A stretch of DNA of 64,000 nt from Ginglymostoma cirratum. Its lineage: Eukaryota. Each line of letters opens with the position of its first letter. Positions within the stretch are counted from its first letter, which is position 1. The stretch is taken from the NCBI GenBank assembly GCA_024137785.1, contig JAHRHZ010000032.1, forward strand, positions 4,900,149 to 4,964,148, written 5' to 3'. The notes beneath the pieces are model-generated. The model did not search any database. It was given only the letters and a program-made list of their open reading frames with translations, and was not told the DNA's origin. Below, in pieces: positions 13,953-60,872 of this stretch. Made by a program: the position numbers and the translations under genes.

Positions 13953-16900
13953 AAAAAGCGTAAGAACTGCGGATGCTGTAAATCAGGATCAAAAACAGAA
14001 GCTGCTGGAAAAGCTCAGCAGGCCTGGCAGCATCTGTGAAGAAGAATCAGAGTGAACATTTTGGGTTGAGTGACCCTTCCACAGAACTGATGGTCAGTAG
14101 GAAAATGTCAGTTTGTATGCAGATGATATGGTGGGGGTAAGGGGTAAGGAGTAAGGAGTAAATGATAGGTGGGGATAGAGCCCAAAGACCCATAGCAATG
14201 TGGTTGACTCTCAGCTGCCCTCTGAAATGGCCCAGCAAGCCACTCAGTTGTACCAATTGCTACAAAGCCTCAAAGAAATGAAACTGGCAGATCACATGGT
14301 ATCTACCTAGGCACTGGAAAAGACAACGACAGAAATGGCCCTGTCGACTGTGCAAAGTCATCCTCGCTAACATCTCGGGGTCAGTGTCAAAATTGGAAGA
14401 GCTGTCTCACAGACGAGTCAAACAACAGCCTGACATAGTTATACTCACAGAATCATACCTTACAAACAATGTCCCAGACACCACCATCACCATCCCTGGA
14501 TGTGTCCTGTCTCACAGTCAGGACCGACCCAGCAGAGGGGACAGCACAACGGTATACAGTTAGGAGGGAGTTGCTCTGGTAGTCCTCAACATTGACTCCG
14601 GATCCCATGAAGTCTCGTGGCTTCAGGTTAAACATGGGCAAGGACATCTCCTGCTGATTACCACATACCGTCCTTCCTCAGTGGATGAATTAGTATTCCT
14701 CAATGTTGATCAACACTTAGAAGAAGCACTGGGGATGGCAAGGTCACAAAATGTACTCTGGGTGGGGGATTTCAATGTCCACCACCAAGAGTGGCCCGGC
14801 AGCAGTACTACCGATAGAGCTGGTCGGGTCCTAAGGGACATAGCTGTTAGACTGGGTCTGTGGCAGGTGGTGAGGGGACCAACAAGAGGGAAGAACATAC
14901 TTGACTTCATCCTTACTAATCCACCAGCTGCAGTTGCATCTGTCCATGACAGTATCGGTAAGAGTGACTATCGCACAGTCCTTGTGGAGACTAAGTCCCG
15001 CCTTCAATTTGAGAACAACCTCCATCGTGTTGTGTGGCACTATCACCGTGTTAAATGAGACAGACTTTGCACAGATCTAGCAACTCAAGACTGGGCATCC
15101 ATGAGGCGCTGTGGGCCATCAACAGCAGCAGAATCGTACTCCAGCACAATCTGTAACCTCATGGCCCAGCATATCTCCACTCAACCATTACCATCAAGCC
15201 AGGGGATCAACCCTGGTTCAATGAAGAGTGCAGAAGGGCATGCCAGGAGCAGCACCAGGCATACCTGAAGATGAGGTATCTACCTGGTGAAGGCACCAAA
15301 CAGGACTACTTGCACGCCAAACAGCAAAAGCAGCAAGTGATAGACAAATAATCCCATAACCAGCAGATCAGATCTAAGCTCTGCAGTCCTGTCACATCCA
15401 GTCATGAATTGTGGTGGACAATTAAACAATTCACTGGAGGAAGAGGGTCCACAAATATCCCTGTCCTCAATGATGGAAGAGCCCAGTACATCAGTGCAAA
15501 AGATAAGGCTCAAGCATTCGCAGCAATCTTCAGCCAGAAGTGCCAAGTAGATGATCCATCTCAGCCTCCTGCAGTGGTCCCCAGCACTACAGTTACCAGT
15601 CTTCAGCCAATTTGATTCACTCCATGTGATATCAAGAAATGGTTGGAGACACTGGATATTGCAAAGGCTACGGGCCTTGACAACATTCCAGCAATAGTAC
15701 TGAAGACTTGTGCTGTAGAACCTGTTGCTCCCCTAGCCATGCTATTCCAGCACAGTGATGGAAGGTGTCAACAACAGTGCTATCAAGCAGCACCTGCTCA
15801 GTGACTCCCAGTTTGGGTTCCACCAGTGCCACTCAGCTCCTGACCTCATTACAGCTTTGGTTCGAACATGGACAAAAGAGCTGAATTCCAGAGGTGAGGT
15901 GAGAGTGACAGCCCTTGACATCAAGGCTGCATTCAACCGAGTGTGGCATCAAGGAGCCCCAGCAAAACTGGAATCAATGGGTATCAAGGGGCAAACACTC
16001 TGGTGGTTGGAGTCATACCCGACACACAGGAAGATGGTCGTAGTTGTGGGAGGTCAATCATCCCAGCTCCAGGACATCTCTGCAGGAGTTTTTCAGGGTA
16101 GTGTCCTAGGGTCAACCATCTTCAGCTGCTCCACCATGACCTTCCCTCTATCATAAGGTCAGAAGTGGGGATGTTCGCTGATGATTGCACAATGTGCAGC
16201 ACCATTCATGACTCCTCAGATACTGAAGCAGTCCATGTTCACATGCCACAAGATCTGGACAATATCCAGACTCGGGCTGACAAGTGGCAAATGACATTTG
16301 TGCCACACAAATGCCAGGCTATGACCATCACCAATAAGAGACAATCTAACCACCACCTCTTGGCATTCAATGGTGTTACCATCACTGAATCCCCCACTAT
16401 CAACATCCTGGGGGTTACCATTGACCAGAAACTCAACTGGACTCACCACATTAACCTACAAGAGCAGGCCAGAAGGTAGGAATACTGCAGCGAGTAAATC
16501 ACCTCCTGACTCCTCAAAGCCTGTCCACCATCTACAAGGCACAAGTCAGGAGTGTGATGGAATACTCCCCACTTGTCTGGATGAGTGCAGCCCCAAAAAC
16601 ACTCAAGAAGCTTGACACCATCCAGGACAAAGCAGCCCACTTGATTGGCACTACATCCACAAGCGTTCACTCCCTCCACCACTGATGCTCAGTAACAGCA
16701 GTGTGTACTATCTACAAGATGCACTGCAGAAATTCTCCAAAGATCCTCAGACAGTACCTTCCAAATCCACAACCACTTCCATCTAGAAGGACAAGGGCAT
16801 CAGACAAATGGGAACACCACCACCTCCAAGTCCCCCTCCAAGTCACTGACCATCCTGACTTGGAAATATATCGTCATTCCTTCACTGTCGCTGGGTCAAA

Positions 16901-17885
16901 ATCCTGGAATTCCCTCCCTTATAGCATTTTGGGTCAACCCACAGCAGGAAGACTGCTACAGTTCAAGAAGGTAGCTCACCACCACCTACTCAAGGGCAAT
17001 TAGGGATGGGCAAGAAATGCTGGCCAGCCAGCGACGCCCACATAGACAAAAGAGAGAAAAGCAGTTGGACAAAGGAGCTGATAAAGATCTGGCTAGGACA
17101 GTGAATAGCTATTAATGGGGACGGTTAGTGGCTAATAATGCATTATGTGTAATGTCAGACAATGTGATGATAAGACCTGGTGTGTGGGATGGTGAGATGG
17201 ACATGGGAGAGTTCAGGCCCTAAAGTTATTGAACTTGATGTTGAGTCCAGAGGGCTGTAGGATCCCCTAGCAGAAAATGAGGTGCTGTTCTTCCAGCTTG
17301 CATTGAGCTTCACTGGAACACTGCAGCAAGCCAGAGACAGAAATGTTAGTCGGGGAACAAGGTGGTGTGTTTAAGTGGCAGGCAACTGGAAGCTCAGGGT
17401 CTTTTCTGGGGGCAGAACTAAGATGTTCTGTGAAGCAGTCACCCAGTCTACACTTCGTTTCCCCAATGTAGAAAAAATCATATTGTGAGCAGTGAATGCA
17501 GTAGACTAGATTGTGGGAAATGCAGGTGAAGCGCTGCTTCACCTGAAAGGTGTGTTTGGCCCCTTGGATACTGGGGTGGGAGGAGGTAAATGGGCAGGTG
17601 TTACACCTTCAATGGTTGCAGGGGAAGGTGCGTGGGGCTGTTGGGGGTGAAGGAAGAGTGGACCAAGGGTGTCCCAGAGAGAATGGTCCCTGCAGAAGGC
17701 AGACAAGGAAGGGATGGGAAATACGTGTCTGGTGGTGGCATCCCGCTGGGGGTGGCGGAAATGGTGTCTGATGATCTTCTGGACGTGGATACTGGTGGGA
17801 TGGTAGGTAAGGACAAAGGGAATCCTATCGCTGTTGTGGGAGGGAAGAGGAGTGAGGGTGGAAGTGCAGGAGATGGGTCTTGAAC
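13953..17885 (-). mobile_element. Penelope-like element 3' part (GIY-YIG plus terminal repeat), split by a LINE: pieces 13953-14189 and 17044-17885
   Basis: ORF 17267-17542 (FTCISHNLVYCIHCSQ..YIGETKCRLGD..EH) is a Penelope-type GIY-YIG endonuclease. The terminal repeat matches 51368-51495. Confidence 0.85.
14190..17043 (+). mobile_element. APE-RT LINE (CR1/L2 group), ORF2 only, decayed, with a SINE-like 5' end (copy 1)
   Basis: QPDIVILTESYL, WVGDFNVHH, TRGKNILD, SDY (APE); QFGF, ALDIKAAF, QGSVLG, MFADD (RT). 3' tail gggcaattagggatgggcaagaaatgctggcc. Confidence 0.9.
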
Positions 17886-24437: not shown

Positions 24438-24603
24438 TCTTATTCATTTGTGGGATGTGGGCATCGAAGGCTGGCTGACATTTATTGCCCATTCCTAGTT
24501 GCCCTTGAGAAGGTGGTGGTGAGCTGCTTTCTTGAATCACTGCAGTCCACCCGCTGTGGGTTGACCCACAATGCCATTAGGGAGGGAATTTTAGAAATTT
24601 GAC
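24438..24603 (-). mobile_element. Short 3' end of the LINE family at 14190-17043
   Basis: Reverse complement aligns with about 16900-17043. Confidence 0.85.
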
Positions 24604-26480
24604 ATGCATGACATGTGATAATGGAGGGACATAAACCACATGAAAGAAGAATAATTTTATCTAGGAAGTACAGTTAATTCTATTCTGCTTAGTTTGTGCA
24701 GTGGGATTTATGTGAACAGCTCAGAGATCTCTTCTATCAAATCAAATGAATCAAACAATCACCGATCAATTCAAAACTGATTTGCATCAAAATTATATCA
24801 ATTCAACATGAAAACTAAAAAGTTAGTTGTGCATAGAGGTCTAGCTAGGTTGGTTAATCCTCTCACATATTATCTTGTTTTGAACTCCATCTCCATGGTT
24901 TGATGCTGCCCTCATAAGACCACTCAGATCTCTGGCATTCACCTTTCCAAGCTCATTTCTCTTTCCTCACTTAAATATTCAATTTTTTTCTCCCCCTATT
25001 GTGGAATTTGTGGTTTTTAAGAGTTTGATTCAATTAAATCATCATTTTTGTTTTAGTGCAAAACATTTTTACATGGAAAAATTCACCAATAATTCAAAGC
25101 TACCCACAGCATAACCTCACTGTGTGATGTGAAATTGTACATGATTAAAATGGTAAATACACATTGATTTCATTTCAACAGAATATTCTTGAATGTAGAA
25201 TGTTTGAGACTTTTCTGAAGATATTCAAGCTGAGGCATGTGTTACATGATTAGACTAAATGGGCTTGCAACTAAACCCAGGATTTTGTCAGCACATTGAA
25301 CCTGCTTGGGCACCGAATCTGTTCAGACTTGTCACCATTTCCTTTGACCAAATGACACTCTTTCAAAAAGAACACTATCAGAACGAAACAGGCAATGATA
25401 ACAATTCTTGTTCAATCACAGAATAAAAAGTTTTTCAAAAAGTGCAAAAACAACATATTAAAAAAAACTATCCAGCTGCATGACTACTTTCCATTCTACA
25501 CAATTGCAGCTTGATCAGATTTCTGTATCAAAAATTCATCAATGAGAAACATTGGCTGTACTTGCTAATAGTCTGCTTAAGCTTTATCTATATTTATTAA
25601 GAAGGATGGAATTTCTTTGTCCGTATCCTGTATTAAGTAATATTTGTGTTTGTGTAATCCTGTCGTAATGCAGTCATAACACTGATGACGATCTTTGCAG
25701 GGTGTCCTTCCTTGCTTTTCTATTGCACAAGTTCTAGTCATTTGACACTTGTCAAAAAACTGACGCAACGTCTTTGAGTCTTTAGTGCTACAGCTTCTTC
25801 TCAGCTTTTATGAAGTTTCCACTCCTCTTTTGTTCCATTGTTCAAATGTTCAGAACAGTGCAATGACTGAATAGAAAGTCTGGATGTTATGTCCATCCTT
25901 CCAGTTATGACATTTCTGATTTGGTGTTGACTATTCTCAGACATTGTAACTAAGCGTTGGGGCAGTTAAGTGTAATGAAGCATTAAAAAATCCTAAATCT
26001 TACATCATTACAGCTCAATATTTCTCTCCACAGGTCTGCATTTGCTACAGTTCTGTATTTTTCAAAATTGAAAATAGTCTTAACATTCAGGAGATCATCT
26101 GACATTTTAATGAGATCAGACTTATTACACATGGCAGACTAGTGTGACAAGCAGAGCTCTCATGCAGTAAAAACAGTTGGCAGAAGACTACACATCTACA
26201 TTAGTGTAAAATTAAACATTCCAAATATATCAACTAATTGTGTTGGGAGTAATGGGGAGGAGACCAATTGAGGTGAATATCTTGGAATAAAAGTACCCAC
26301 TCTCCCTCCTACCTCACTGCCATGACCCTCAGAATGTACATTCTTAATGTGGAAGATATTGCTTCCAAACGTGGATTTTTTTGGGAGGGTAATTATTGAT
26401 CCTTAATTCATTATAACTTTAACCCCATCAGTTGAATATCATTTAGATTTTTTTATGAAAGCCATTTGCCTGCTCCTTTG

Positions 26481-27275: not shown

Positions 27276-28471
27276 TATATTTCATTGAGAATATCTGGAT
27301 GATTCTCAATACATATCTGGTGGTAATACTTCATATGCTCATTTGGAGAAAATTTAAGAACAAAAATTATGTTAACCTGAAATTAGTGATTAATTGCTGT
27401 TTGTATTTGAATGTATGAAACAAACACTAAATACCAAAATGATGTAACTGATATTATGATTTGAAAGTTTTTTTTTTCTTTTTAATTAGGATTTCTCCGA
27501 GGATTAACAGATTGAATTCACAGGCAACTGGCATTTGAAAAAAAAGGGCAATTCTTTTTTGTGATATTTAGCCAAATTTCAAAATAGAATTGCCTGAAGT
27601 ATGTGGACAGATGCCTTGCTGTTATAATTTAGAAGTTCATCTTCAATACTTAAGACGTTATCTTTGTGCGTATAAACTTTCCATTTCTGAAGGTTTAACA
27701 CCAAAAAATACACAACATTTCTCTTGACAGATGCCAATACGATGCCCTGTTTATTTTCAGCATCTGTCTATTTGTTTCAGGTTTTCGGGTTTTGAGTTTT
27801 TCTTTACCTCCGCTACAGATGAGGAGAAGCAGTGGTGTGGTGATATTGCTATTGGGCTAGTAATCCCAACATGACAGATCGTGGAATTCAAATTCAATTA
27901 ATAAATAAAATCTGAAAACTTTAAACAAGGTGTCTAATGACGAACATGAAATCATGCAGTTTGTGGTTAAAAACCCACCTGGTTTAGGGAAGGAAATCTG
28001 CTAATCTTACATGGTCTGACTTACATGTGACTGTTGTGGATCTGCAATGTGGTTGACTCCTAAATGCCTTCTGAAGTAGCTTAGTTCAATCTAACTGCTA
28101 CAAAGTCTCACAAAAGGACAGACCACAGACATCGAACAAGTACTAGAACCGGCACACGCAGTCCTGGTGACACTGCAAAGTCCACCTTATTAACATCTGG
28201 CCACTAGTGTCAAATTTTGAATAGATATCTTATAGCCAAGTCAAGCAGCATCCTGACATAGTTATGCTCACAGAGTCATCCCTTGCACACAGTCTCCTAA
28301 GTACTGCCATTGCTATTCCTGGGCATGTCCAGACCTTTCCACAGAACAGAACCACAGCATAGTGGCACACAGTTAGGAAGAAGCTGTACTGGGAGACTTC
28401 AGCGCTGCCTCCTGACTTCATGAACTCTCATAGCATCAGGTGAAACCTGGGCAAAGAAACTTTCTGCTGAT

Positions 28472-28871
28472 NNNNNNNNNNNNNNNNNNNNNNNNNNNNN
28501 NNNNNNNNNNNNNNNNNNNNNNNNNNNNNNNNNNNNNNNNNNNNNNNNNNNNNNNNNNNNNNNNNNNNNNNNNNNNNNNNNNNNNNNNNNNNNNNNNNNN
28601 NNNNNNNNNNNNNNNNNNNNNNNNNNNNNNNNNNNNNNNNNNNNNNNNNNNNNNNNNNNNNNNNNNNNNNNNNNNNNNNNNNNNNNNNNNNNNNNNNNNN
28701 NNNNNNNNNNNNNNNNNNNNNNNNNNNNNNNNNNNNNNNNNNNNNNNNNNNNNNNNNNNNNNNNNNNNNNNNNNNNNNNNNNNNNNNNNNNNNNNNNNNN
28801 NNNNNNNNNNNNNNNNNNNNNNNNNNNNNNNNNNNNNNNNNNNNNNNNNNNNNNNNNNNNNNNNNNNNNNN
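28472..28871. other. Assembly gap (400 N)
   Basis: Run of N. Confidence 1.
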
Positions 28872-28928
28872 GCATCAAGTTTTCCTGCTCCTATGATGCT
28901 GCTTGACCTGCTGTGTTCATCCAGCCCC
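28872..28928 (+). mobile_element. End of a young Penelope-like terminal repeat abutting the gap
   Basis: catcaagttttcctgctcctatgatgctgcttgacctgctgtgttcatccagcccca matches 60306-60362. Confidence 0.88.
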
Positions 28929-31571
28929 AAGAATGTAATCTGGGTTTGGTCCTCAATGCCGCTCACCAACAGTGGCTGGGTAGCCCCATTACTGACCGAG
29001 CTGGCCATGTCCAAAAAGGTCGTAGCTGCTGGACAGCTCCTGCAGGAACTGATCAGGGAACTAACAGGGGGGAAAATTACACTTACCATGCCTTCACTAT
29101 GCAAAGCAGAGAAGATGTGTCTGTCCATGATCATTTCAGTAAGAGTGACCACTGCACAGTCCTGGTGGAGACGCGGTGCTATCTTCACACTAATGATAAC
29201 TATCATTGTGTTATGGGGCACTTCCACCATATTGAATAGGATAAGTTTCAAACAGGTCTGACAACTCATGAATGTGCATGCTTGAGGCATTAAGGATCAT
29301 CATCAACAGCATAATTATACTTAACCATAATCTGTAACGTCATGGTTCCACTACTACCACTAAGCCAAGGAATCAACTGTGAGCCAATGCATAATGCAGA
29401 TGGTCATGCCAGCAGCAGCAACATTAAAACGGATCAGATCTAAGCTCTGCAATCATGTCACATTCAGTCATGAATGGTAATTGACAATTAAATAACCCAT
29501 TATGTGGAGGAGGTTCTATAGGTATTCTCATTCTCAATACATCAGCACAAAAGACAAGGCAGAAGCATTCCCAAGCATCTTCAGCCAAGTGGATGATTCA
29601 TTTTGGATTCCTTGGAAGGTCCTTAGCATCACAGATGCTAATCTTCAATCAATTTGATTCACTCAACATGATGAAGATACAGCTGAAGACATTAAGTACT
29701 ACAAAGGATATGGCCCTGACAACATTTGGCAGCAGTACTGAAGAAATGTGCTCCAGAACTGGCCTTGCAAAGCTGTCCCAGTACAATTACATGACTAGTA
29801 TTTAACTGACAATTTGGAAACTCACCCAGGTATTTGCCCCATTCACCAAAAAAAGGACAAGTCTAACCCAACCAATTACCAGCCCATCAGTCTACTCTTG
29901 ATCATCAGTAAAGTGATGGAAGGTGTCATCAACAGTGCTATCAAGCAGCACTTAACAAAAACCTGCTCACTGACTGTTATTTTCAGCTCTTTCAGACACA
30001 TTCTGCTTTTGACCTCATTACAGCCTTGGTTCAAACATGGACCAAAGAGATGAACTCCAGATATGAAGTGAGAGTCACTGTCCATAGCCGTCAAGACCAC
30101 ATTTGAATGAGTGCAGCATCAAGGAGCTCCAGCAAAACTGGGACATTGAGAATCAGGAGGAAAACTGTCCACTGGTTGTAGTTTTAGCTGGCAAAGGACA
30201 GTGGTTGTGATTGTTGGAAGTCAGTCATCTTACTCCCAGGACATCATTGCAGGAGTTCATCAGGGTAGTGTCCTGAGCCCAACCATCTTCAGATGCATCA
30301 TCAATAACCTTCCCTCATTATAAAGTCAGAAGTGGGGATGCTCGCTGATGATTGCACAGAGAAAGTCTAACCATCATCCATTGACATTCAATAGCATTAC
30401 CATTACTGAATCCCCCACTATCAAAGTCCTGGGGGTTAATGTTGTCCGAAAACTTAACAGGACCAGCCATTTACATACTGTGGTTACAAGCGTATGTGTG
30501 AGACTGGAAATTCTGGTGAGTAACTTATCTCTTGACTCCCAAAGATCTTCCCGCCATCTACAATGCACACATCAGGAGCGTTATGGAATATTCTCGATTG
30601 CCTGGGTGAATTCAGCCCCAACAACACTCAAGAAGCTCAACCTTATACAGGATAAAGCAGCCCACTGATTGACATCCCTTCTAAAACCTTCAACATTTCC
30701 TTCCTCTACCACTAACATATAATGGCAGCAGTGTGTATCATCTGCAAGACAGCTTGCGAAAAATTAACCAAGGCTCCTTCAACAACCTTTATTACGTAGA
30801 ATCATGAAGGCAGCAGATAACTGGGAACAAAACCACCTGCAAATTCCCCTTCAAGACACACACGACACTGACTTGGAGAATTATCACTATTCCTTCGTTG
30901 TCACTAGGTCAAAATCCTGCAACTTGCTCCTTAAGAGCAATATGGGTATCTTTACGTCTTTACATAGACTGCAGCAGAACAAGAAGACTGCTCAACATCA
31001 ATTTCTCATAGGGAATTAGGGATGGGCACCAGATGCTGGGCTAAGGAATGATTGAAAAGGAGCATGTGGAAACTTTACATTGGAATTTACAGATTGATCA
31101 TGTGAACAAGCTGAACTTGAGCTATATTTTTTCAGTTTATGGATAAACTGAGGCACAGCTGATTAGTACAAATGGTATTTTGCACATAGGCGGTGGTTCC
31201 CTTATCACACAAAATGGCAAATTACTTTGAAATCTTTTCTTCCAGGGTATTTGAGAGAATATATATTGATTGACACCAATGTGCGTTAGTGAAAATGACT
31301 GACAGGGCGTTGATGATTCCTATAGTACTGATGACATACATCCCAAAAAAACATAAAATCAAAGCAAGGTACTGGGGATCTGAAAAAAGTGTCACGTGTC
31401 GGAAAAACTAAGCTGGTCTGATTTTGTGTTGGTAGACAGAGGAACAGGGTTAACATGTCAAGTTCAATATGACTGTTCTTTGAAATGCCACAGAAACCGG
31501 CTTAGTTGAGCATCAGAAGATCATAAACCTGAGTTATGTCTTTAAACCAAACACCATTATTTTGGGGATAA

Positions 31572-31808
31572 AATTCCCTACCCCCCTACCTACACTCACC
31601 TTTACTAGCTCCATCCCTGCCTCTTCGACTTGTCTGCCTCCTCTCCACCATCCATCCTCTATCCGCCTCCCCCCTCTCTCCCTATTTATTTCAGAACCCT
31701 CTTCCCCTCCCCCATTTCTGATGAAGGGTCTAGGCCTGAAACATCAAGTTTTCCTGCTCCTATGATGCTGCTTGACCTGCTGTGTTCATCCAGCCCCATG
31801 CTTGTTAT
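31572..31808 (+). mobile_element. Solo young Penelope-like terminal repeat with hammerhead core (31714-31749) and 20-bp TSD
   Basis: TSD caccattattttggggataa at 31552-31571 and 31809-31828. Core CTGATGAAGGGTCTAGGCCTGAAACATC. Confidence 0.9.
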
Positions 31809-31965
31809 CACCATTATTTTGGGGATAATGTTTCGGAGATATGACCGCGATAGTTGCATGAAAGATTCTACTGGAAAGTAGTTACTAGAGCAGCTCTCAG
31901 CATATATAAGGGCTGCACAATCGCTGTGTAATTATTGTTAATAAATACTATTTGAAGGAACAAAC

Positions 31966-32058
31966 TTCTGAAGGGTCTAGGCCCAAAACGTCAGCCTTCC
32001 TGCTCCTCTGATGCTGCTTGGCCTGCTGTGTCCATCCAGCTCTACACCTTGTTATCTC
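31966..32058 (+). mobile_element. Mini Penelope-like terminus starting at a decayed hammerhead core
   Basis: ttctgaagggtctaggcccaaaacgtcagcc...ccttgttatct. Confidence 0.75.
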
Positions 32059-32653: not shown

Positions 32654-32780
32654 AGAGATAGTAAGAACTGCCGATGCTGGAGTCAGAGGTAACACAGTGT
32701 GGAGCTGGAGGAGCACATCAGGCCAGGCAGCATCAGAGGAGCAAGAAAGTTGATGTTTCGGGTCAGGACCCTTCTTCAGA
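32654..32780 (-). mobile_element. Mini Penelope-like terminus with hammerhead core and 9-bp TSD
   Basis: TSD aataatctc at 32645-32653 and 32781-32789. Minus strand CTGAAGAAGGGTCCTGACCCGAAACATC. Confidence 0.82.
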
Positions 32781-32809
32781 AATAATCTCTTTCTTCATAG
32801 TTTTTATTG

Positions 32810-41461: not shown

Positions 41462-41510
41462 AGATAACAAGCATGGGGCTGGATGAACACAGCAGGTCAA
41501 GCAGCATCAT
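41462..41510 (-). mobile_element. 49-bp Penelope-like terminal fragment with 8-bp TSD
   Basis: Matches 58729-58777. TSD aatattct at 41454-41461 and 41511-41518. Confidence 0.85.
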
Positions 41511-42491
41511 AATATTCTTTCCTCTTCCACCCCATTGCATATACGCATGTACGCAGATGTATAATGTGTAAACCATAACTGTTAAGTTGTCAAAGTGTGA
41601 TATACTACTGGACAGAGCAATGCTACAAACAGGATTAACTTTGCTCAGGTACTGGCTAAGAAGAGTTTACAGAACACATTAAACTGTACAAAGTATGTAG
41701 CATGTGAATTTTACAAGAAACTTCTTCAATGTGGGATGCAAAAAGAGAATACATCGAAATCAGAATAGGGTGAATATTATCATAGGTGCACAGCCTGGAC
41801 GAAGTGGATAGTATTGAGTTCACTGAAGAATCTGATGTCTTTATTACTGACATAACTGAATTTATCAATGCTGCATCATCCAATTAACAGGACTGACCTA
41901 TCGCATGACAGTGACAGTGACAGTGCACTTCTTTGAAACACAGAGCACACGTTACCAGTTTTCAAGTTTTCAGGAAACCAGAACATGCATTTAAATCTTG
42001 CTCATCCCACATTACCTGCATTAAACGTGTGCGATTTTGAGGGTTGGGGGCAACGCGTATGGCAAGCAAAATACTTGAACAACATACACTGCGATATTAT
42101 GATGGACAATGTATTTTGATTCCAGCATCAGTATTGGAGGCAAGATAACATAACTTGGTTGGGAATCACTAGTGCATTGGGATGCAATGCATTTGGTGCC
42201 AAAAGAGGCAAAACTTTCTCTGCTATATTTACAATGCTAACATCATTGTAATTTAAAACGGAGGCTAACTCAGTCCATATCAATCTGTTGAAAGGTATTA
42301 CATTTCAGAAACCAGATTTCAGCTAATGTTCTGCATAATTTAATTCTTCATACATCATACAATCATATCTTAAAATTTTCAGTAAGGTGGACTCATATAA
42401 TATGGTCTAATGCTAATCAAAAGGATAGTTTTTGAAACAATTCTTCATTAAAGCATTCTTTCCTAAACTGAAAATAATAGCTATACGGTAC

Positions 42492-47499: not shown

Positions 47500-47596
47500 G
47501 ATAACAAGGTGTAGAGCTGGATGGACATAGCAGGCCAAGCAGCGTCAGAGGAGCAGGCAAGGCTGATGTTTCGGGCCTAGACCCTTCTTCAGAAAT
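47500..47596 (-). mobile_element. Mini Penelope-like terminus with hammerhead core
   Basis: Minus strand CTGAAGAAGGGTCTAGGCCCGAAACATC; ggctta on both flanks. Confidence 0.8.
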
Positions 47597-47819: not shown

Positions 47820-48040
47820 AGTCAATAAATGTGGAGCTGGAAAAGCACACCAGGTCAGACAGCATTTGAGGAGCAGGAATGTCAATGTTTCGGGCCGAAA
47901 GCCTTCATCAGGACTGATGAATGACTTTGGCCCGAAACATTGACTTTCCTGCTTCTCGGATGATGCCTGACCAGCTGTGCTTTTCTGGCTCCACATTTAT
48001 TGACTCTAGCTTCCAGCATCTGCAGTCCTTTCTGTCTCCA
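47820..48040. mobile_element. Palindromic mini Penelope derivative with two back-to-back hammerhead cores and 14-bp TSD
   Basis: TSD tgacctggaatatg at 47806-47819 and 48041-48054. Inverted arms of about 93 nt centred on ttcatcag-ga-ctgatgaa. Confidence 0.88.
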
Positions 48041-50712: not shown

Positions 50713-50948
50713 ATAACAAGGTGTAGAGCTGGATGAACACAGCAGGCCAAGCAGCATCAGAGAAGCAGGAAAGCTGACATTTCGGGTCTAGGCCCTTCTT
50801 CAGAAGGGTCATTTCTGAAGAAGGGTCTAGACCCAAAATATTCAGCTTTCCTGCTCCTCTGATGCTGCTTGGCCTGCTGTGTTCATCCAGCTCTACACCT
50901 TATTATCTCAGATTCTCCAGCATCGGCAGTTCCTACTATCTCTGTTAC
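50713..50948. mobile_element. Palindromic mini Penelope derivative with two opposed hammerhead cores and 15-bp TSD
   Basis: TSD aagttctcatcagtg at 50698-50712 and 50949-50963. Inverted arms of about 93 nt around cttcagaa-gggtcat-ttctgaag. Confidence 0.88.
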
Positions 50949-53611: not shown

Positions 53612-55489
53612 AATCACTGTATCGAAAAGGAGGCTTTGGAATAATGTTTAACAACAGCAATCACTCCCTTTCAGTATACTGTACAGTATATACTACACTG
53701 CAGCAATGATGACTGGATGTTGAGGAACATTTCACAGGCGTCACTGCCGAAGTTCCATGGGTGTTCTGGCACACTTTCACTGTAACTTCAGAAGTAATCC
53801 GAAAAAACTCTGCAATGAGGATCAGAGCCCAGGCATGGCACTTTCTACTCATCCTTGTTAAGAACAGAACTGCGACCCACCATCTACAAGATGTGAGTTG
53901 TAAGACTGGATATGATCAGAGATGGAAGCTCCCATACAGTTCATAATCTCCTAGTCTCAAGGGAACAGTGGACAGGCAATACAGTTGGGTGAGAGGAAGT
54001 GTTTTAGCTTATTCATTTTCACATGTGGGGCCCACCTGCATTATATTCTGGACCTATGAAGAATTCTCAGCAATTCTGTTTCTCCTTATAAGGTCATCAA
54101 TGGCCCCAAGCAAATGTTATTTCCCACTGTGACTGGACAGCTCCTAATTCGTAGCATCCTCTCCACACCAGCATCTGAGAGCTGGCCTGATTAGGATGGC
54201 TGCCTTTTATAATTATTTAAGTTAAACAACTTCAATTTTATGAACCTTGATCGGAGCATTTATGCTGGATGTGCCAAAGGTGTTCATGCCCATTGTGCTT
54301 CAACACAGTCCAGCCTGCAGTCAATACGTACATAAAAATTGTCGTTTAAGCAGCAGCGATAAAAAAAACAATGCTGATATTACAGTTTTGAAAAACAAAC
54401 ATTACATGACTGATCTGCCACTAGTATGTCATCCACTTTAAATTAGCTCAGTGCTGACTGTATTCCCCAAAATTGTATATGATCTGGCAAGCAAAGCAAA
54501 TAGACTGAAACTATACAGACGACAGATTCCAGACAAAAGGGTTTAGAGAGTCTTGTGTGGTATACTCAGGCTGTTGAGAAGCACAATAAATCTACTATAC
54601 ATATAGATTAATGGAGCTGAGTGGATCAGGCATACATTAATCGATAATATATTGCAGTACCATCCTGAGGTTCATCTGATAAATGTCAGAGGTGTTCAGC
54701 TAGCAAATGCTTCCACTCCAAGGACTATTGTAACATCCCTCAAATCATTTTGAAATATAAAATGGATCAATTATTTCCAATTTTTAAAAACAATGCCTTT
54801 AATCTCTTCACTTCAACATCATATCTGCTTGCAGTTTCTAGCAGTGAATCATTATGAACATTTGAAATAGAACACAGTCTTCAAAAGGCGCCAGTCCAAT
54901 TTACCATACATTCTGTACTCAGAGCACTTTATTTAATGCCTCATTTCTTAGACAAAAGCTAGTCTTGGTATGATGAGTAAGTTTAGATTAATTAATATTT
55001 TGTTTACAGTAAGGATTCATGGCTGGAAAAATGAACTAAGAAATGAAATGAAAGAAATATAAAGAAAGCATTGCTTTTTTTTTCTCTATTTCTGCACATT
55101 GAAAAATAATAGGGTAAATATTCAAATATATGCAAGCTTTTGTTATGGAGCCATAAAAAGAAAGGGAGGGGAATATCTAAAGGCATTATCTCCATTGGAT
55201 TTTTACCTTTTTCCAGATTATCAAATGATTAATCTCTTACACACAAGTATGTGGATCCAGACTCAGATAGCACAGACAGACAGACAGACAACAGCACACT
55301 GATACGTACATATGATATGCAGGATCTGGATTTCATATTCCCTGACTGGTGGGTTTGAAGATGGTTTTGAGAATAGCAGGTAAAATTCAGAGAATGGCCC
55401 TCCTGCTGCCCAGTGTAGCAGTTGGCAGACAGCCTGACTGTCTTTGGGCCTATTAAAGCACTTAAACGGCTAAATAATGACCAACTAAA

Positions 55490-55553
55490 GCGGTGGCACA
55501 GTGGCACAGTGGTTAGCACTACTGCCTCACAGCACCAGGGACCTGGGTTTGAT
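55490..55553 (+). mobile_element. Isolated tRNA head of the HE1/V-SINE-like SINE, followed by decayed CR1 pieces (to about 56035)
   Basis: gtggcacagtggttagcactactgcctcacagcaccagggacctgggtttgatt; downstream KFVDDTK..WAKIWQLEYNVRKCEVMH. Confidence 0.75.
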
Positions 55554-57207
55554 TAAATAATCAAGTGCACGAAGTGGAGTGGAAATATGTACAATAACTA
55601 TCAAAGGAGAAAAAGACTAGGGAAACTAATGGTGCTGAAGGCAATAAGTCCCCCAGATCTGAGGGGTTGCATCCTAGGATATTGTAAATGTACCATCATC
55701 AAGTTTGTGGATGACACAAAAATAAATGGAAAAATTAGTGAGAATGACACAAAAAAGAGGGATATAGACAGGTTAAGTAAGTGGGCAAAAATTTGGCAGT
55801 TGGAATATAATGTGAGAAAATGTGAGGTTATGCATGTTTGCATGAAGAATAGAGGAGTTGAATTTAAATCAATGGCGAAAGACTGCAGAAAGCTACAGAA
55901 TCATGTCCAGAAGGTAATAGGTAAGGCACTGGACTGTTGGGTTTTATTTTAAAGTGAATTGATCATGAAAATAAGATTGTCTCACTCAATGAGCAAATGG
56001 CGAACTTCTACATGTACATCTTATGGTTTTATGGGATTGTTACGGGATTTATGGGATTCGCCACCTGAAACATCTTAGCCAAGAATGTGCAGATTATGTG
56101 CACTGTAAAGTCTAGCTCAAAAAATCACATAAGCAAACATATAAATTTGTCAGGAGAAATTATTATCAGGCATATATATATAAACAAAATTGCATGACTG
56201 CATAGTCATATTTTTAAAACCAGAAGACCTGGTTAATTTTATCACGACTATGTTTTTGTCCTCTATTCCGACTCCCACACTTCTTTTTCCTTTTTTCTAT
56301 CTGTGCAACCTTGAAGTCATCTTGTGAATTGAAAAAATTAAAAATTCTGGCGAAATTCCATCTGTTTGAGAAACAAAAGCGACTTTCAACGATGACTTTG
56401 TAACAATCAGAATCTAATGATATCCCTCGAGTTCCAGAATTGTCAGAACTAGAAATTTAAAGGGTTAATGATCTTAAGAATGGGACTATTAATAGGTCAA
56501 TCTGTATTCCTAATTACAGATCCCTGTTGGTGAGTTACATAGCAACAGATTAAATACACCAATTATGTTATCAAGGGAAAACTCAATAAAAGGGTTCTTT
56601 TAGTCCAAGCAAAACAATACAGTCTCTGCTGGGTAAAACACATTATTAGAGGCTGTCAATCACATCCTGCTAAACAGAATTCTGCTAGCACCATTTTAGA
56701 ATAAAGGTCGAAATGTCACTTTATTACTTCTGGCATTATAACTGTGCAATCATTCAAAGTGAGCTATCCTGGTCAATGAATAGGAAATATATGGAAGTGA
56801 TTAGGGAGTGATTTAGGGTGACATAGGCAAGCTAGTGCACAAAACGCTGAACAGACATTTGAAGGGGGAAAATGACTCCAATGTTCAAAGTCCTGGTCTG
56901 TGAAATTCAATAGGTCCTGAAACAAATATAGGGATTGCAATGCCCATTGCTTCTGATGCAGGCAGCAAGCAAACTCTGTGCTGCCTGCTCACTACCATTA
57001 CTGTAATGCAGCCAGTGTCATGTGCATTGTTCAGTGGCTGCATGTCTCTGTAGGATGTGCAAATTCATAAGAAACTAGCACTGCTTAAAGTTTGTCTGCA
57101 TTTCTTAAAGCCTGTCTATACCTCTTAAAGTGCTAGTGTGTTCTAGCTGTCACAGTTGCTGGAAGTGGCTGGAGAAGAGAGCACCTGATGATTAAAATCT
57201 CTGAAAT

Positions 57208-57740
57208 ATGGCAAAACAGGACAGCGAGTGATTCTCTGTTGCAGCCACGGCAGCATTAGTTCAGGAAATGGATAAGGTACAAGGAGGCCCTCCATTCAGA
57301 CACTGCAAAGGTTATGGTCAAGCTTGCAACATTGCCAGGAAGAATAGGATGCAGTGTTGTACAAAGTACAATGACCTCATGCGAACGGCCAAAGTCAGTA
57401 AATACATTTTCAAACGGCACTTCCCTACAATTGAACCACTCGCCTCACACACTGCTTCATTCACCCCACCACCTTTCTAAGCAACCTATTAACTGAAATT
57501 CCTGCCACAAATTCATAGCTATACCTTCACATCTCTCAGTACTGGCTATTCGACCATTGATAGTCTTATCATCAAAATTCATTACACCACGCTGTCTGAC
57601 AGGCTTTCTCTTACAGAAGAAGGTAACTGCAGGCAACAGCATCTAGAGATGTCCTCACCCTGATGGAGGGGATTGGGCTCACCATCATTGGAAAGGCCTT
57701 GACTGGGGTCATGACCAATGGAGGGGCTGAAACCCTTGTA
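57208..57740 (+). pseudogene. Decayed Myb/SANT-like gene of probable PIF/Harbinger transposon origin, with one intron
   Basis: AALVQEMD..RKNRMQCCTKYNDLMRTAK resembles the helix-3 motif of Harbinger Myb/SANT proteins. Donor gtcagt near 57394, acceptor ttctcttacag near 57616. Confidence 0.5.
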
Positions 57741-58690
57741 GAAGATATCATACCCAATTCTCCTTGTCACATCTCTCATCCCCCATATGGCACAACCACT
57801 TCTGACTTACAAGTTGCAGCTAGTACAACAATACTCTCCCACCCTTCCTTCATTCCAGTCCTAGCTTTGTATCTTTCTTCTCAACGATACCCAAGACCTG
57901 CCACCTGACCAGGTGGTGGTGCAGCAGCAAGAGGTAAAAGTGGATGAGGACACTGACGCTGACTGACTGATATCACTCGCTCTCACACTCTCAGCTGCCA
58001 GCTTAGATGTTGACATTGTGTATGCTGAGAGGATGGCAGAAAGGAGGAACTTGCACATGTTGCATCAAGAGGAAAGTGTGGGCTCCAGTTGAAACAGAGA
58101 GAAAAAGTAACACAGTGCCAGCTCATAGAAGGGTATGGTATACAGGACTTCTGCTGTAGAGGAATTTAATGGTGGCAAGTACAAATAAAATGCTGATGGA
58201 TAGACACATAGAAATATAACGCATTGGTTGCCCAGCCAGAAAGGTTACACGGCAAGGAGCACAGATGTGACCAAAAGGAACATTTTACAAGGCTTTCTGC
58301 AGGGATTGAAGCCTACTCTTCCCAGCATGGAAGTGACAGGTCAATCGATTAACACTCTGTGGCCCCAACCGTGATACAACATGGCAACACATCTCTCAGT
58401 TTCCAATACAGCAGAAAGTCACTCAACATCTGAGTGTTGCAGTGGAAACCCAGAGAGGTGGCATTATGTCTGTAGTTACCAGTGTTCAGAGGGGTTTACT
58501 CAGGGTTTCACAGCAATACAATAATTAATCCTCTAACACATTACTAGGTTTGCTAAGGCGCAAACCCAAGGAAACAGTAGTAGGTCTGTAAAACACAAAC
58601 TATTGTTCTGTCTCAGGATGGTAATGTTTATCCTTCGACTACTGTTACTCAACCAGTATTCAGTCAGCTAGCCAGCCCATATTGAATGGT

Positions 58691-60374
58691 ATCAGAGATA
58701 AAAGGTACTGCAGATGCTGGAGAATCCGAGATAACAAGCATGGGGCTGGATGAACACAGCAGGTCAAGCAGCATCATAGGAGCAGGAAAACTTGACGTTT
58801 CGGGCCTAAACCCTTCATCAGAAATGGGGGAGGGGAAGAGGGTTCTGAAATAAATAGGGAGAGAGGGGGAGGTGGATAGAAGATGGATAGAGGAGAGGAT
58901 AGGTGGAGAGGAGGCAGACAAGTCGAAGAGGCGGGGATGGAGCCAGTAAAGGTGAGCGTAGGTAGGGGGGTAGGGAGGAGATAGGTCAGTCCAGGGAGGA
59001 CAGACAGGTCAAGGGGGCGGGATGATGTTAGTAGATAGGAGATGGGGGTATGGCTTGATGTGAGAGGAAAAACAGGTGAGGGAGGTGGAGATGAGCTGGG
59101 CTGGTTTTGGGATGCGGTTGGGGGAGGGGAGATTTTGAAGCTTGTGAAATCCACATCGATGCCATTGGGCCGCAGGGTTCCCAGGCTGAATATGATTTGC
59201 TGTTCCTGCAGCCTTCGGGTGGCATCACTGTGGCATTGCAGGAGGCCCAGGATGGACATGTCATCTGAGGAATGGGAGGGGGAGTTGAAATGGTTCGCAA
59301 CTGGGAGGTGCAGTTGTTTGTTGCGAACTGAGCACAGGTGTTCTGCAAAGCGGTCCCCAAGCCTCCGCTTGGTTTCCCCGATGTAGAGGAAGCCACAACG
59401 GGTACAGCGGATGCAGTATACCACATTGGCAGATGTGCAGGTGAACCTCTGCCTGATGTGGAAAGTCTTCTTGGGGCCTGGGATTGGGGTGAGGGAGGAG
59501 GTGTGGGGGCAGGTGTAGCACTTCCTGCGGTTACAAGGAAAAGTGCCGGGTGTGGTGGGGCTGGAGGGGAGTGTGGAGTGGACAAGGGAGTCGCGGAGGG
59601 AGTGGTCCCTCTGGAAGGCAGATAAGGGTGGGGAGGGAAAAATGTCTTTGGTGGTGGGGTCTGATTGCAGATGGCAGAAGTGTCGGAGGATGATGCGTTG
59701 GATCCGGAGGTTGGTGGGGTGGTATGTGAGGACGAGGGGGATTCTTTTTTGGTTATTGTTGCGGGGACGGGGCGTGAGGGATGTGTTCCGGGACAAACAA
59801 CTGCACCTCCCAGTCGCGAACCATTTCAACTCCCCCTCCCATTCCTCAGATGACATGTCCATCCTTGGCCTCCTGCAATGCCACAGTGATGCCACCCGAA
59901 GGCTGCAGGAACAGCAAATCATATTCAGCCTGGTAACCCTGCAGCTTAATGGCATCAATGTGGATTTCACAAGCTTCAAAATCTCCCCTCCCCCAACCGC
60001 ATCCCAAAACCAGCCCAGCTCATCTCCACCTCCCTAACCTGTTTTTCCTCTCACCTCAAGCCACACCCCCATCTCCTATCTACTAACATCATCCCGCCCC
60101 CTTGACCTGTCCGTCCTCCCTGGACTGACCTATCTCCTCCCTACCCCCCTACCTACACTCACCTTTACTGGCTCCATCCCCGCCTCTTCGACTTGTCTGC
60201 CTCCTCTCCACCTATCCTCTCCTCTATCCACCTCCCCCTCTCTCCCTATTTATTTCAGAACCCTCTTCCCCTCCCCCATTTCTGATGAAGGGTTTAGGCC
60301 CGAAACATCAAGTTTTCCTGCTCCTATGATGCTGCTTGACCTGCTGTGTTCATCCAGCCCCATGCTTGTTATCT
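58691..60374 (-). mobile_element. Young Penelope-like insertion: 3' body with open GIY-YIG domain (58691-59787) plus an inverted partial copy (59793-60374), 13-bp TSD
   Basis: TSD catattgaatggt at 58678-58690 and 60375-60387. VYCIRCTRCGFLYIGETKRRLGDRFAEH..HF..E..I..LGT..PNG. Highly similar inverted arms of about 580 bp; hammerhead cores at 58790-58825 (-) and 60278-60313 (+). Confidence 0.95.
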
Positions 60375-60493
60375 CATATTGAATGGTGTTGTCCCAAAGA
60401 GGACTTCTATAGACTGCAAGGTCAGCTTCAGTTTCCCCCATTGTGAGCCATCAGCCTTTCTCCAGCCGTATTGCAGCCACTGGTGTGGCTCTG

Positions 60494-60872
60494 TTTTTTA
60501 TTCTTTCTTGGATGTGGACGTTGCTGACAAGGCCAGCATTTGTCGCTCATCCATAACTGCACTCAAACAGAATGGCTTGCTAGACAATTTCGGAGGATAG
60601 TTAATCCTTAATGACATTGCTGTGGCTCTGGAGTCACATGTAGGTCAGACCCCACCACCGTGCCCCCCTCCCCACTCCAAGTAAGAATGGCAGATTTCCT
60701 TCCCTTAATGGCATCAGTGAACCAGATGAGTTTTGACAATAATTAATGATAATGACATGGCATTGTTTATTTTCAATTCTAGATTTTCTTATGCACTCAT
60801 TTGAATTAATGTCCCTACAGCACTGGTTTTGGTCTCAGATTGCTGGTGCAGTGACGCTACCACATCATCTCT
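60494..60872 (-). mobile_element. Old tRNA-head SINE with a conserved central domain (Deu-domain/SacSINE1-like, from memory) and the tail of the ORF2-only LINE
   Basis: Head gatgtggtagcgtcactg; core agggaaggaaatctgccattcttac..gtctgacctacatgtgactccagagccacagcaatgt; tail aaatgctggccttgtcagcaacgtccacatcc plus an A-rich end. Confidence 0.78.

What the first reader, a model, noticed from the sequence alone, without database searches (positions are those of the whole stretch)
14190..60872. A LINE whose 5' UTR is a SINE: ORF1-less APE-RT element with tRNA head and core domain, and a SINE built from its two ends
Seen: two independent LINE copies (14190-17043 and 27825-31050) carry the same non-coding block only about 100-110 nt upstream of the first endonuclease motif, leaving no room for ORF1. 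Copy 2 keeps the whole block: a tRNA-like head (agtggtgtggtgatattgctattgggctagtaatcc) and the core agggaaggaaatctgc..tctgacttacatgtgact..gcaatgtggttgactc. Copy 1 is truncated inside that core. The SINE at 60494-60872 is the same head and core joined directly to the LINE's last 55 nt or so. Known: SINEs normally share only the 3' tail with their partner LINE, and the origin of conserved SINE central domains is poorly explained; the core resembles the Deu-domain SINEs as I recall them. Inference: either the LINE captured a SINE as an internal Pol III-type promoter in place of its 5' UTR and ORF1, or the SINE is an internal-deletion derivative of this LINE. A repeat masker would split these into adjacent SINE and LINE hits and hide the link.
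Basis: partly seen in the sequence, partly recalled or inferred. Interest (0 to 1): 0.8.

Follow-up and report, generated by a model that had tools for sequence, protein, structure and literature searches.

The report
Shark LINE sharing its leader with SINE
Two decayed copies of a shark jumping gene (a LINE with no first reading frame) start with the same tRNA-like leader as a nearby short element (SINE), and that SINE is the LINE with its coding part cut out, which gives a concrete vertebrate case for how SINE bodies arise.

Summary
c1 (14172-17060) and c2 (27821-31072) are decayed copies of one APE-RT LINE, about 70% identical. Both run from the same core block into the endonuclease with no SINE tail in between. 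c2 also keeps the SINE's body and head.

The SINE (60490-60886, minus strand) equals this leader joined, within 1-2 nt, to the last 11 nt of ORF2 plus the 3' UTR. It is the LINE minus its ORF.

Whale-shark gene models repeat the same core-to-ORF junction. The reads' majority letters give a B box (GGTTCAAATCC) in the head and an ATG in the core. That ATG may be the ORF start.

Not supported:
- Deu or UCON3 identity of the core.
- A tRNA call on the window copies.
- Significant target-site duplications.
- TTTT depletion specific to T.

Lack of ORF1 is ordinary for shark CR1-group lineages (Rex1, Zenon, L2).

Best reading (0.5): a replicating LINE lineage with a tRNA-like leader, with the SINE as its ORF-deleted derivative. 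Rivals are capture of a SINE leader by the LINE, or recurrent SINE/LINE recombinants.

The parts
14172..17060 (+). LINE copy c1, 5'-truncated inside the core; many stops and frameshifts
   Evidence: abuts an unrelated repeat on its 5' side
14172..14250 (+). c1 remnant of the core shared with the SINE; the shared block ends at 14250 (..ACTCAGTT)
   Evidence: nhmmer SINE vs c1 14181-14250, E=5.5e-5; alignment A1
14227..14229 (+). ATG inside the shared core; candidate ORF2 start (inferred, not shown)
   Evidence: P0165 residues 1-19 match 14227-14283 at 18/19; P0160 starts at the same ATG; the reads' majority letters give TCTGAAATGG
14251..14353 (+). LINE-specific stretch between the shared block and the endonuclease; reads as a basic leader (PRHWKRQRQK) in the APE frame
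   Evidence: not similar to the LINE/SINE tail
14354..15055 (+). Endonuclease (APE) domain of c1
   Evidence: Pfam PF14529 E=8e-12 on 14564-15055; N-terminal KVILANISG..PDIVILTES aligned to P0001/P0165
15737..16476 (+). Reverse transcriptase domain of c1
   Evidence: Pfam RVT_1; 44% identity to the full-length relative P0006
16992..17060 (+). c1 3' end: last 3 whole codons (KGN; 16992-17000), stop TAG (17001-17003) and 3' UTR. This is the part kept in the SINE; the breakpoint lies 1-2 nt upstream, inside the preceding CTC codon
   Evidence: C-terminus aligns to the end of P0006; hairpin-capable
27821..27905 (+). c2 head (tRNA-like, decayed)
   Evidence: Family reads lie on 27862-27929. Their upstream loose-end majority letters ..GGGGACATGGGTTCA followed by AATCCCA give a B box. 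Weak direct match to the SINE head
27906..27982 (+). c2 body between head and core
   Evidence: z=3.4 vs the SINE; contigs join head and core across it (joints 27906->27983)
27983..28084 (+). c2 core (AGGGAAGGAAATCTGC .. GCAATGTGGTTGACTC ..)
   Evidence: z=8.2 vs the SINE; very high family depth
28085..28471 (+). c2 LINE-specific leader and start of the endonuclease, up to the gap
   Evidence: Aligns to c1 14340-14658 and, by local alignment, from 14195 on
28932..31072 (+). c2 LINE body and tail after the gap and an inserted foreign repeat (28872-28931)
   Evidence: Aligns to c1 14750-17023 in four blocks; tail shortened
60567..60886 (-). SINE: head, body and core (equals the LINE leader), with a 27-nt G-rich insertion private to this copy
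60490..60566 (-). SINE tail, equal to the last 11 nt of LINE ORF2 plus the 3' UTR, ending AATAAAAAA
24439..24604 (-). 5'-truncated 3' end fragment of the same LINE; extends upstream of the SINE tail, so it is LINE-derived
11306..11392 (+). Short RT fragment of the same or a related LINE
   Evidence: 78% over 91 nt

Best explanation
This is an old, now dead family of compact (about 3.2 kb) single-ORF APE-RT LINEs of the CR1 group in elasmobranchs.

Its full-length form begins with a leader of about 255-330 nt: a tRNA-derived head carrying a B box, then a body, then a core. The partner SINE is the same element with almost exactly the ORF removed. It consists of the leader, up to or just into the start of ORF2, joined to the last 11 nt of ORF2 plus the roughly 60-nt 3' UTR.

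Shown here:
- The shared leader in c2.
- The same core-to-ORF junction in c1, c2 and several whale-shark copies.
- The absence of a SINE tail or ORF1 upstream of ORF2.
- The two breakpoints of the SINE.
- The much greater abundance of the core compared with LINE-specific sequence.

Inferred:
- The short derivative is transcribed by Pol III from the head and copied in trans by the LINE's RT, which recognises the shared hairpin-capable 3' tail.
- The LINE itself is read by Pol II or by read-through transcription, with the leader acting as its 5' UTR and promoter region.
- The head reached the LINE lineage once, by template switching onto a tRNA-type RNA, before the SINE arose.
For: - APE and RT domains are present. 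c1/c2 homology is continuous from the core into APE.
- The SINE matches the c2 leader (E=5e-9), the c1 core and the c1 tail. No sequence private to the SINE lies at the junction.
- The stretch after the core is not tail-like: P=0.05-0.9 in six comparisons. The single P=0.05 hit is residual core homology (GCAAGCCACTCAGTT), not tail.
- The ORF2 stop is at 17001-17003, and the C-terminus aligns with the end of the 962-aa relative P0006.
- Whale-shark gene models P0165, P0160, P0161 and P0014 read from core-derived codons into LINE-specific codons and APE.
- Majority letters of the laid reads and contigs (table of other letters and loose ends) give GGGTTCA|AATCCCACC in the head and TCTGAAATGG in the core. 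Contigs join head to core and core to LINE-specific sequence. Core depth is 10^3-10^5 against 40-1,655 for the LINE-specific part.
- Contigs of a related species carry the orthologous c2 with its head (records 8 and 14).
- Relatives P0006 and P0013 are single ORFs of 962-983 aa on 3.6-3.9 kb contigs.
- ORF1-less CR1-group lineages are the rule in sharks (PMC13343379).
- The 3' tail can fold into a hairpin.
- First readers' notes (unchecked) describe ten or more other loci of 3.18-3.27 kb with this layout.
Against: - Only one window copy (c2) carries the head. Its head match to the SINE copy is weak on its own.
- The candidate target-site duplication around c2 is not significant (P=0.11; a third of random genomic pairs score as well).
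- No tRNA is detected by ARAGORN or Rfam.
- The ORF start cannot be fixed. In c1 the core ATG is out of frame with APE. The in-frame whale-shark models are decayed copies picked by a gene finder because they happen to be open. P0165 carries a 20-nt insertion that c1, c2 and P0160 lack.
- The order of events (head first on the LINE, or first on the SINE) is not resolved by any test run here.
- No intact ORF2 of this family was found among 1.8 billion representative proteins.
- RNA reads hardly touch the LINE-specific part.
Confidence: 0.5

Rival explanations
1. Recurrent recombinants. The LINE natively owns the core (and perhaps the body) as its 5' UTR but has no head. The SINE arose in the way Kojima proposed: a tRNA head was added to a bipartite 5'+3' LINE derivative. 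Headed LINE copies such as c2 then arise again and again, by template switching or recombination between LINE and SINE RNA or DNA within the shared leader. They are not a replicating lineage.
For: - The SINE and LINE share about 100-250 nt of leader, which is an ideal substrate for homologous switching.
- SINE-derived sequence is far more abundant than LINE sequence.
- c1 is truncated in the core, so c2 is the only headed copy in the window.
- Kojima's model is documented for RTE and Vingi (PMC5786205).
Against: - Notes from other windows describe many headed copies of near-constant length (unchecked).
- No headless full-length 5' end has been seen, though none could be searched for here.
Confidence: 0.2
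2. The LINE captured a SINE leader. The SINE (head, body, core, LINE-type tail) came first. A LINE copy truncated just upstream of ORF2 then became joined behind the SINE's core, for example by tail-homology-primed insertion into the tail of a genomic SINE copy. That composite founded the headed LINE lineage.
For: - Insertion primed on the homologous tail would place the LINE body exactly between the core and the tail, which explains the sharp junction (inference).
- Only about 30-100 nt of LINE-specific sequence precede the ORF.
- SINE parts are commonly exchanged between families (PMC7245038).
Against: - It needs a coincidence of breakpoints at both ends of the ORF, and possibly that the LINE took its start codon from the SINE.
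- No remnant of a tail lies between the core and ORF2.
- The core matches no known older SINE domain. UCON3 gives P 0.012-0.87, with 2 of 9 comparisons below 0.05 before correction for multiple tests. The Deu hallmark strings are absent.
Confidence: 0.18
3. Chance adjacency: a SINE happened to insert just upstream of a 5'-truncated LINE.
For: SINEs are abundant and nested insertions are common in this window.
Against: - The same junction is present in c1, c2 and whale-shark copies.
- No SINE tail or A-run lies between the core and the LINE.
- The SINE itself carries LINE sequence right up to the junction.
Confidence: 0.02

Closest known systems
SINEs built from a tRNA head plus the 5' and 3' parts of their partner LINE (Bov-tA, WALLSI, CoeSINE4/5, hagfish SINE2-9/10_EBu; Okada & Hamada 1997; Kojima 2018 PMC5786205; Kojima 2020 PMC7245038)
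   Same: The SINE is a head, then LINE 5' sequence, then the LINE 3' tail, with nothing else at the junction. This is an internal-deletion ('bipartite') origin of the SINE body.
   Different: - All documented cases involve RTE or Vingi LINEs (abstract). Here the ORF features point to the CR1 group.
- In those cases the autonomous LINE does not carry the head. Here a LINE copy does.
ORF1-less CR1-group LINEs of elasmobranchs (Zenon, Rex1, chondrichthyan L2; PMC13343379, 2026)
   Same: A single APE-RT ORF, no ORF1, compact size, presence in sharks. The A-rich AATAAAAAA end recalls the poly-A tail given as Zenon's hallmark.
   Different: That survey mentions no tRNA-like 5' end and no SINE sharing the 5' UTR ('tRNA' 0 occurrences, 'SINE' 1). 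Which lineage this family belongs to could not be tested.
Classical shark SINE/LINE pairs (HE1/HER1 V-SINE; SacSINE1 DeuSINE with a CR1-4_DR-like or L2-2_CM tail; PMC3747384, PMC5499810)
   Same: tRNA-type SINEs of sharks, mobilised through a shared LINE 3' tail.
   Different: Those pairs are reported to share only the tail, and their bodies are the V or Deu domains. This core is neither Deu nor, from my memory of the V domain, V.
Small-RNA/LINE chimeric retrocopies made by template switching (U6/L1 type; bioRxiv 10.1101/2025.02.02.635956, abstract only)
   Same: A Pol III-type RNA sequence sits at the 5' end of LINE sequence.
   Different: In those chimeras the junctions vary and the LINE part is randomly truncated. 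Here the junction is the same in every copy seen.
Internally deleted non-autonomous LINEs without a Pol III head (RIME/ingi and bipartite RTE, Vingi and R2 derivatives, as listed in PMC5786205)
   Same: A non-autonomous partner that is the autonomous element minus its ORF.
   Different: Those derivatives are thought to be Pol II transcribed and lack a tRNA-derived head.

Membership tests
SINE derived from a bipartite (5'+3') LINE (Kojima/Okada model) | SINE 3' tail homologous to the LINE 3' end | tested here: met
   SINE 60490-60566 matches c1 16992-17060 and the fragment at 24439-24506.
SINE derived from a bipartite (5'+3') LINE (Kojima/Okada model) | SINE body homologous to the LINE 5' region | tested here: met
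   the SINE matches c2 27828-28084 (E=5e-9) and c1 14181-14250.
SINE derived from a bipartite (5'+3') LINE (Kojima/Okada model) | 5'-derived and 3'-derived parts abut without other sequence | tested here: met
   the junction is ..CAGTT|(T)CAAGGGCAATTAG, precise to 1-2 nt, seen on the one SINE copy available.
SINE derived from a bipartite (5'+3') LINE (Kojima/Okada model) | Partner LINE belongs to RTE or Vingi (true of all cases known in 2018) | not testable with these tools
   No reference LINE set was at hand for a tree. The RT motifs (ALDIKAAFNRVWH, GV.QGSVLG, FADDC), the C-terminal FK..L end and the Pfam PF14529 hit fit the CR1/Jockey group from my knowledge.
tRNA-derived SINE (SINE2) | A and B boxes or a tRNA-like fold at the 5' end | tested here: inconclusive
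   A B box with T-arm (GGGTTCAAATCCCACC) appears in the reads' majority letters. An A-box-like AGCAGTGGTG lies at 27828-27837. ARAGORN and Rfam find no tRNA in the decayed window copies.
CR1-group ORF1-less LINE (Zenon / Rex1 / shark L2) | Single ORF with APE and RT, no ORF1 | tested here: met
   One search shows the domains. In c2 only about 255 nt precede the position of the core ATG, and all of it is homologous to the SINE.
CR1-group ORF1-less LINE (Zenon / Rex1 / shark L2) | Poly-A tail (given as unique to Zenon) | tested here: inconclusive
   The SINE copy ends AATAAAAAA. The c1, c2 and 24-kb fragment ends are A-rich but decayed.
CR1-group ORF1-less LINE (Zenon / Rex1 / shark L2) | Placement of the RT domain in a tree with named references | not testable with these tools
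   No named Repbase or Dfam sequences were available.
DeuSINE | Deu domain (about 140 nt) in the body | tested here: not met
   Two hallmark stretches of the printed hagfish Deu rows have no match in the window at up to 3 mismatches. The test is limited because the whole domain was not aligned.
UCON3-domain SINE | UCON3 domain (about 55 nt) after the head | tested here: not met
   Only the 9-mer GGTTGACTC is shared. Local alignment scores against shuffles give P=0.012-0.87, with 2 of 9 comparisons below 0.05 before correction for multiple tests.
Small-RNA/LINE chimeric retrocopy (template switch, one-off) | Variable junction onto a randomly truncated LINE | tested here: not met
   The junction is the same in c1, c2 and the whale-shark models P0165, P0160 and P0014.

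The most novel reading that the evidence does not exclude
This is an autonomous LINE whose own promoter is a tRNA-type internal Pol III promoter, or a TFIIIC-bound head that recruits polymerase. Autonomous element and SINE would then be one transcription unit with and without the ORF. That would be the first vertebrate LINE launched from a SINE-type head, and a direct route by which SINEs are born from LINEs.
Probability: 0.1. Interest if true: 0.85.

Novelty: new variant of a known kind. Interest (0 to 1): 0.55.

Why it matters
The origin of SINE bodies is an old open question. The one documented source, LINE 5' regions, was known only for the RTE and Vingi clades.

Here a shark LINE with CR1-group features and its SINE differ essentially by presence or absence of the ORF. 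The LINE copy itself carries the Pol III-type head. If a genome-wide census confirms this, three things follow:
- The LINE-deletion model extends to the dominant vertebrate LINE group.
- There is a natural system to ask how a LINE with a tRNA-like 5' end is transcribed.
- Repeat annotation of shark genomes needs a warning: maskers will split such elements into an adjacent SINE and LINE and undercount full-length LINEs.

Tried and rejected
No DNA around related proteins could be fetched, so no census of junctions or 5' ends was possible.
2. Exact-pattern scans for LINE-specific and core strings gave nothing real. This covers viral contigs (3 scans), metagenome contigs (2) and genome contigs (1). 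The four viral hits to a 16-mer were chance.
3. Target-site duplications. The c2 candidate CTTTAC..TACAGAT is not significant, and none was found for the SINE or c1.
4. TTTT test for Pol III compatibility. c1 has 2 T4+ runs against 4.7 expected and c2 has 5 against 8.8. None of the 7 is shared between the copies. But A and C runs are depleted to a similar degree, so the result is inconclusive.
5. Whether a SINE tail hides between the core and ORF2: no.
6. tRNA detection in the window copies: none, even at Rfam E up to 10.
7. UCON3 and Deu identity of the core: not supported.
8. I first read P0165 as proof that ORF2 starts at the core ATG and that the SINE deletion is in frame (MAQQATQ-FKGN*). 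On checking, P0165 carries a 20-nt insertion absent from c1, c2 and P0160, and gene models are biased towards copies that happen to be open. I therefore keep this only as a possibility.
9. A search with the P0165 leader found only P0165 itself.
10. RNA run X24 laid no reads.
11. Full-text searches for core strings, and for literature on LINEs with tRNA heads, found nothing.


Full report
**What is there**

The window holds two copies of one APE-RT LINE.
- c1 (about 14172-17060, + strand) has an Exo_endo_phos_2 hit at 14564-15055 and RVT_1 hits at 15737-16476. It is riddled with stops and frameshifts.
- c2 (about 27821-31072, + strand) aligns to c1 collinearly at 67-76% identity.

Close protein relatives (55-80% identity) are only fragments. 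They come from whale shark (Rhincodon typus) and horn shark (Heterodontus francisci) gene models, so the family is shared among sharks.

The nearest intact ORFs are 36-44% identical. P0006 is 962 aa and P0013 is 983 aa, both on 3.6-3.9 kb contigs. Another agent's note calls this genome nurse shark; I did not verify that.

**The assembly gap**

The left flank of the gap ends at the equivalent of c1 14658. The right flank starts with a 60-nt piece of an unrelated interspersed repeat (28872-28931, about 12 copies in the window). LINE sequence resumes at the equivalent of c1 14750.

The two sides are therefore collinear on c1. Ninety-one nt of LINE are unaccounted for, and a foreign insertion lies at or in the gap. 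Frame across the gap cannot be known. I did not try to fill it.

**The shared block**

c1/c2 homology runs without interruption from GCAATGTGGTTGACTC (c1 14195, c2 28044) into the endonuclease.

The SINE lies on the minus strand (about 60490-60886). Its reverse complement matches:
- c2 27828-28084 (nhmmer E=5e-9),
- c1 14181-14250 (E=5.5e-5),
- the LINE 3' end at c1 16986-17064.

Taken piecewise against c2, the core is strong (z=8.2), the body moderate (z=3.4) and the head weak (z=2.0).

The head is secured in another way. I laid contigs and reads of two species on 27600-28471 at 80% likeness.
- Family sequence piles up on 27862-27929 and on 27960-28079.
- Single contigs join the head segment to the core segment (joints near 27906 to 27983).
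- One contig joins the core to LINE-specific sequence (28002 to 28167).

The loose-end majority letters upstream of 27862 read ..GGGGACATGGGTTCA. With the following AATCCCA(C)C this gives a canonical B box and T-arm (GGTTCAAATCC).

The window copies themselves are too decayed for ARAGORN or Rfam, even at E up to 10. Descent of the head from a tRNA is thus supported by the B box alone.

**No tail and no ORF1 upstream of ORF2**

The 100-130 nt after the core are not similar to the LINE/SINE tail in any of six comparisons. A separately inserted SINE can therefore be ruled out.

In c2 only about 255 nt lie between the element's start and the position of the core ATG, and all of it is homologous to the SINE.

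The endonuclease start (KVILANISG) is at c1 14354, which is 103 nt after the shared block ends at 14250. Lack of ORF1 is, however, the rule for Rex1, Zenon and chondrichthyan L2 elements (PMC13343379). It is not a peculiarity of this family.

**Anatomy of the SINE**

The SINE follows the LINE leader up to ..GCCACTCAGTT (c1 14250). It then continues with (T)CAAGGGCAATTAGGGATGGGC.., which is c1 16992 onward.

AAG GGC AAT TAG are the last three codons and the stop of ORF2. The c1 C-terminus (..FKKVAHHHLLKGN*) aligns to the last residues of P0006.

So the 3' breakpoint lies 11 nt before the stop codon, and there is no sequence private to the SINE at the junction. The shared tail can fold into a hairpin: consensus -11.4 kcal/mol, and z=-3.4 for the SINE copy. 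With three decayed sequences this is suggestive only.

**Where ORF2 starts**

Whale-shark gene models read through the 5' junction.
- P0165 starts MAQQATQLYQSLQSLKEMK. This matches c1 14227-14283 at 18/19, so its ATG lies inside the shared core. It runs on into KVFLTNICG..PDIVIFTES.
- P0160 starts at the same ATG.
- P0161 starts in the beginning of the core (MSFREGNLP).
- P0014 reads core, then LINE leader, then APE.

The majority letters of the laid reads keep this ATG (TCTGAAATGG).

These models add independent copies, from another species, with the same core-to-LINE junction.

They do not prove the start codon.
- In c1 the ATG is out of frame with APE.
- P0165 owes its frame to a 20-nt insertion that c1, c2 and P0160 lack.
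- Gene finders report only copies that happen to be open.

Relatives carry basic N-terminal leaders of 26-61 aa. That places the true start between about 14190 and 14290.

Either way, the SINE's 5' breakpoint lies at or within a few dozen nt of the ORF start. The SINE is the LINE minus its ORF.

If the core ATG is the start, the deletion is in frame (MAQQATQ-FKGN*). I mark this as a possibility only.

**Abundance, age and expression**

Summed contig depth is 10^3-10^5 on the core, 10^2-10^3 on the head and 40-1,655 on LINE-specific bins. Depth is not a copy number, but SINE-type sequence clearly far outnumbers LINE sequence.

Contigs of a related species carry the orthologous c2, head included, at about 96-97% identity (records 8 and 14). 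The insertion therefore predates that split.

Poly-A RNA reads cover the core on both strands but hardly touch the LINE-specific part. The 5' part of c2 lies in an exon of a spliced host transcript (GT..AG intron 27666-27780; X1 record 1).

No intact ORF2 of the family appeared among 1.8 billion representative proteins. The family looks extinct, at least as far as predicted proteins show.

**What the core is not**

Two Deu hallmark strings taken from printed hagfish Deu rows are absent from the whole window at up to 3 mismatches.

The UCON3 domain shares only the 9-mer GGTTGACTC, and its alignment scores are not significant.

From memory, the V domain of HE1 is also different. That is a recollection, not a test.

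**Mechanism and rivals**

All of the data fit a headed LINE lineage with an ORF-deleted SINE derivative. I put this at 0.5.

Two rivals remain.
- Headed copies may be recurrent SINE/LINE recombinants within the shared leader (0.2).
- The LINE may have acquired a pre-existing SINE leader, for instance by tail-homology-primed insertion into the tail of a SINE copy. That would also place the LINE body exactly between core and tail (0.18).

Chance adjacency is excluded by the constant junction.

The TTTT test for Pol III compatibility is inconclusive. There are 2 and 5 runs against about 4.7 and 8.8 expected, and none is shared between the copies. A and C runs are depleted to a similar degree.

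The candidate target-site duplication around c2 is not significant.

**Comparison with what is known**

Kojima (2018, PMC5786205) showed LINE 5' parts in SINE bodies for RTE and Vingi only, and proposed 'head added to a bipartite LINE' (abstract). The 2020 hagfish paper adds further RTE cases.

The 2026 CR1-group survey describes ORF1-less Zenon, Rex1 and L2 elements in sharks. It mentions no tRNA-like 5' end.

Full-text searches for core strings, and for LINEs with tRNA heads, found nothing.

I therefore rate this a new variant of a known kind. The clade of the LINE is inferred from motifs, not from a tree.

**Earlier notes of this scan**

First readers flagged the same architecture at ten or more other loci of this genome, 3.18-3.27 kb long. 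One of them claimed a TTTT-poor sense strand.

These notes are unchecked, and I could not read those loci. They agree with c2's length and layout, and they are the main reason I prefer a replicating headed lineage over one-off recombinants.

**Limits**

- Pattern scans of the public contig collections found nothing real.
- I used no letters from the printed human AmnSINE1 row in any tool.

Noticed in passing
window 28872-28931; also 175-229, 31742-31809, 31997-32040, 32700-32755, 41462-41511, 47516-47568, 47832-47879, 50728-50775, 50844-50891, 58723-58795, 60306-60374: A roughly 60-nt unit (GCATCAAGTTTTCCTGCTCCTATGATGCTGCTTGACCTGCTGTGTTCATCCAGCCCC) recurs about 12 times on both strands. One copy sits right after the assembly gap inside c2, and a related repeat abuts the 5' end of c1 (13960-14170). 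Other notes of this scan call such units PLE-derived, with hammerhead-like cores.
   Followed up: no
window 27600-28471: A 946-nt contig of run X1 lies on 27600-27665 and 27781-28471 and skips 115 nt with GT..AG ends. The head, core and start of c2 are therefore part of an exon of a spliced host transcript on the + strand. Poly-A RNA reads support the upstream exon weakly.
   Followed up: partly
window 60650-60676: The SINE copy carries a 27-nt G-rich insertion (on the element's strand GGAGTGGGGAGGGGGGCACGGTGGTGG) in the core. The insertion is absent from c2.
   Followed up: no
proteins P0007, P0011, P0014 (horn shark and whale shark gene models): Annotated host proteins carry stretches of this LINE's ORF2: CWC25 homolog, zinc finger protein 850-like, and an unnamed whale-shark model (g41287.t1). 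These are either exonisation or gene-model artefacts in public shark annotations.
   Followed up: partly
window 24439-24604 (-) and 11306-11392 (+): Two further small fragments of the same or a related LINE. One is a 5'-truncated 3' end that extends upstream of the SINE tail. The other is an 87-nt RT piece.
   Followed up: partly
proteins P0006, P0151, P0152, P0013, P0154, P0156: The nearest intact relatives are 962-983 aa single ORFs on ENA contigs of only 3.6-3.9 kb. This suggests a wider clade of compact ORF1-less LINEs. Their 5' ends would be worth checking for tRNA-like heads.
   Followed up: no
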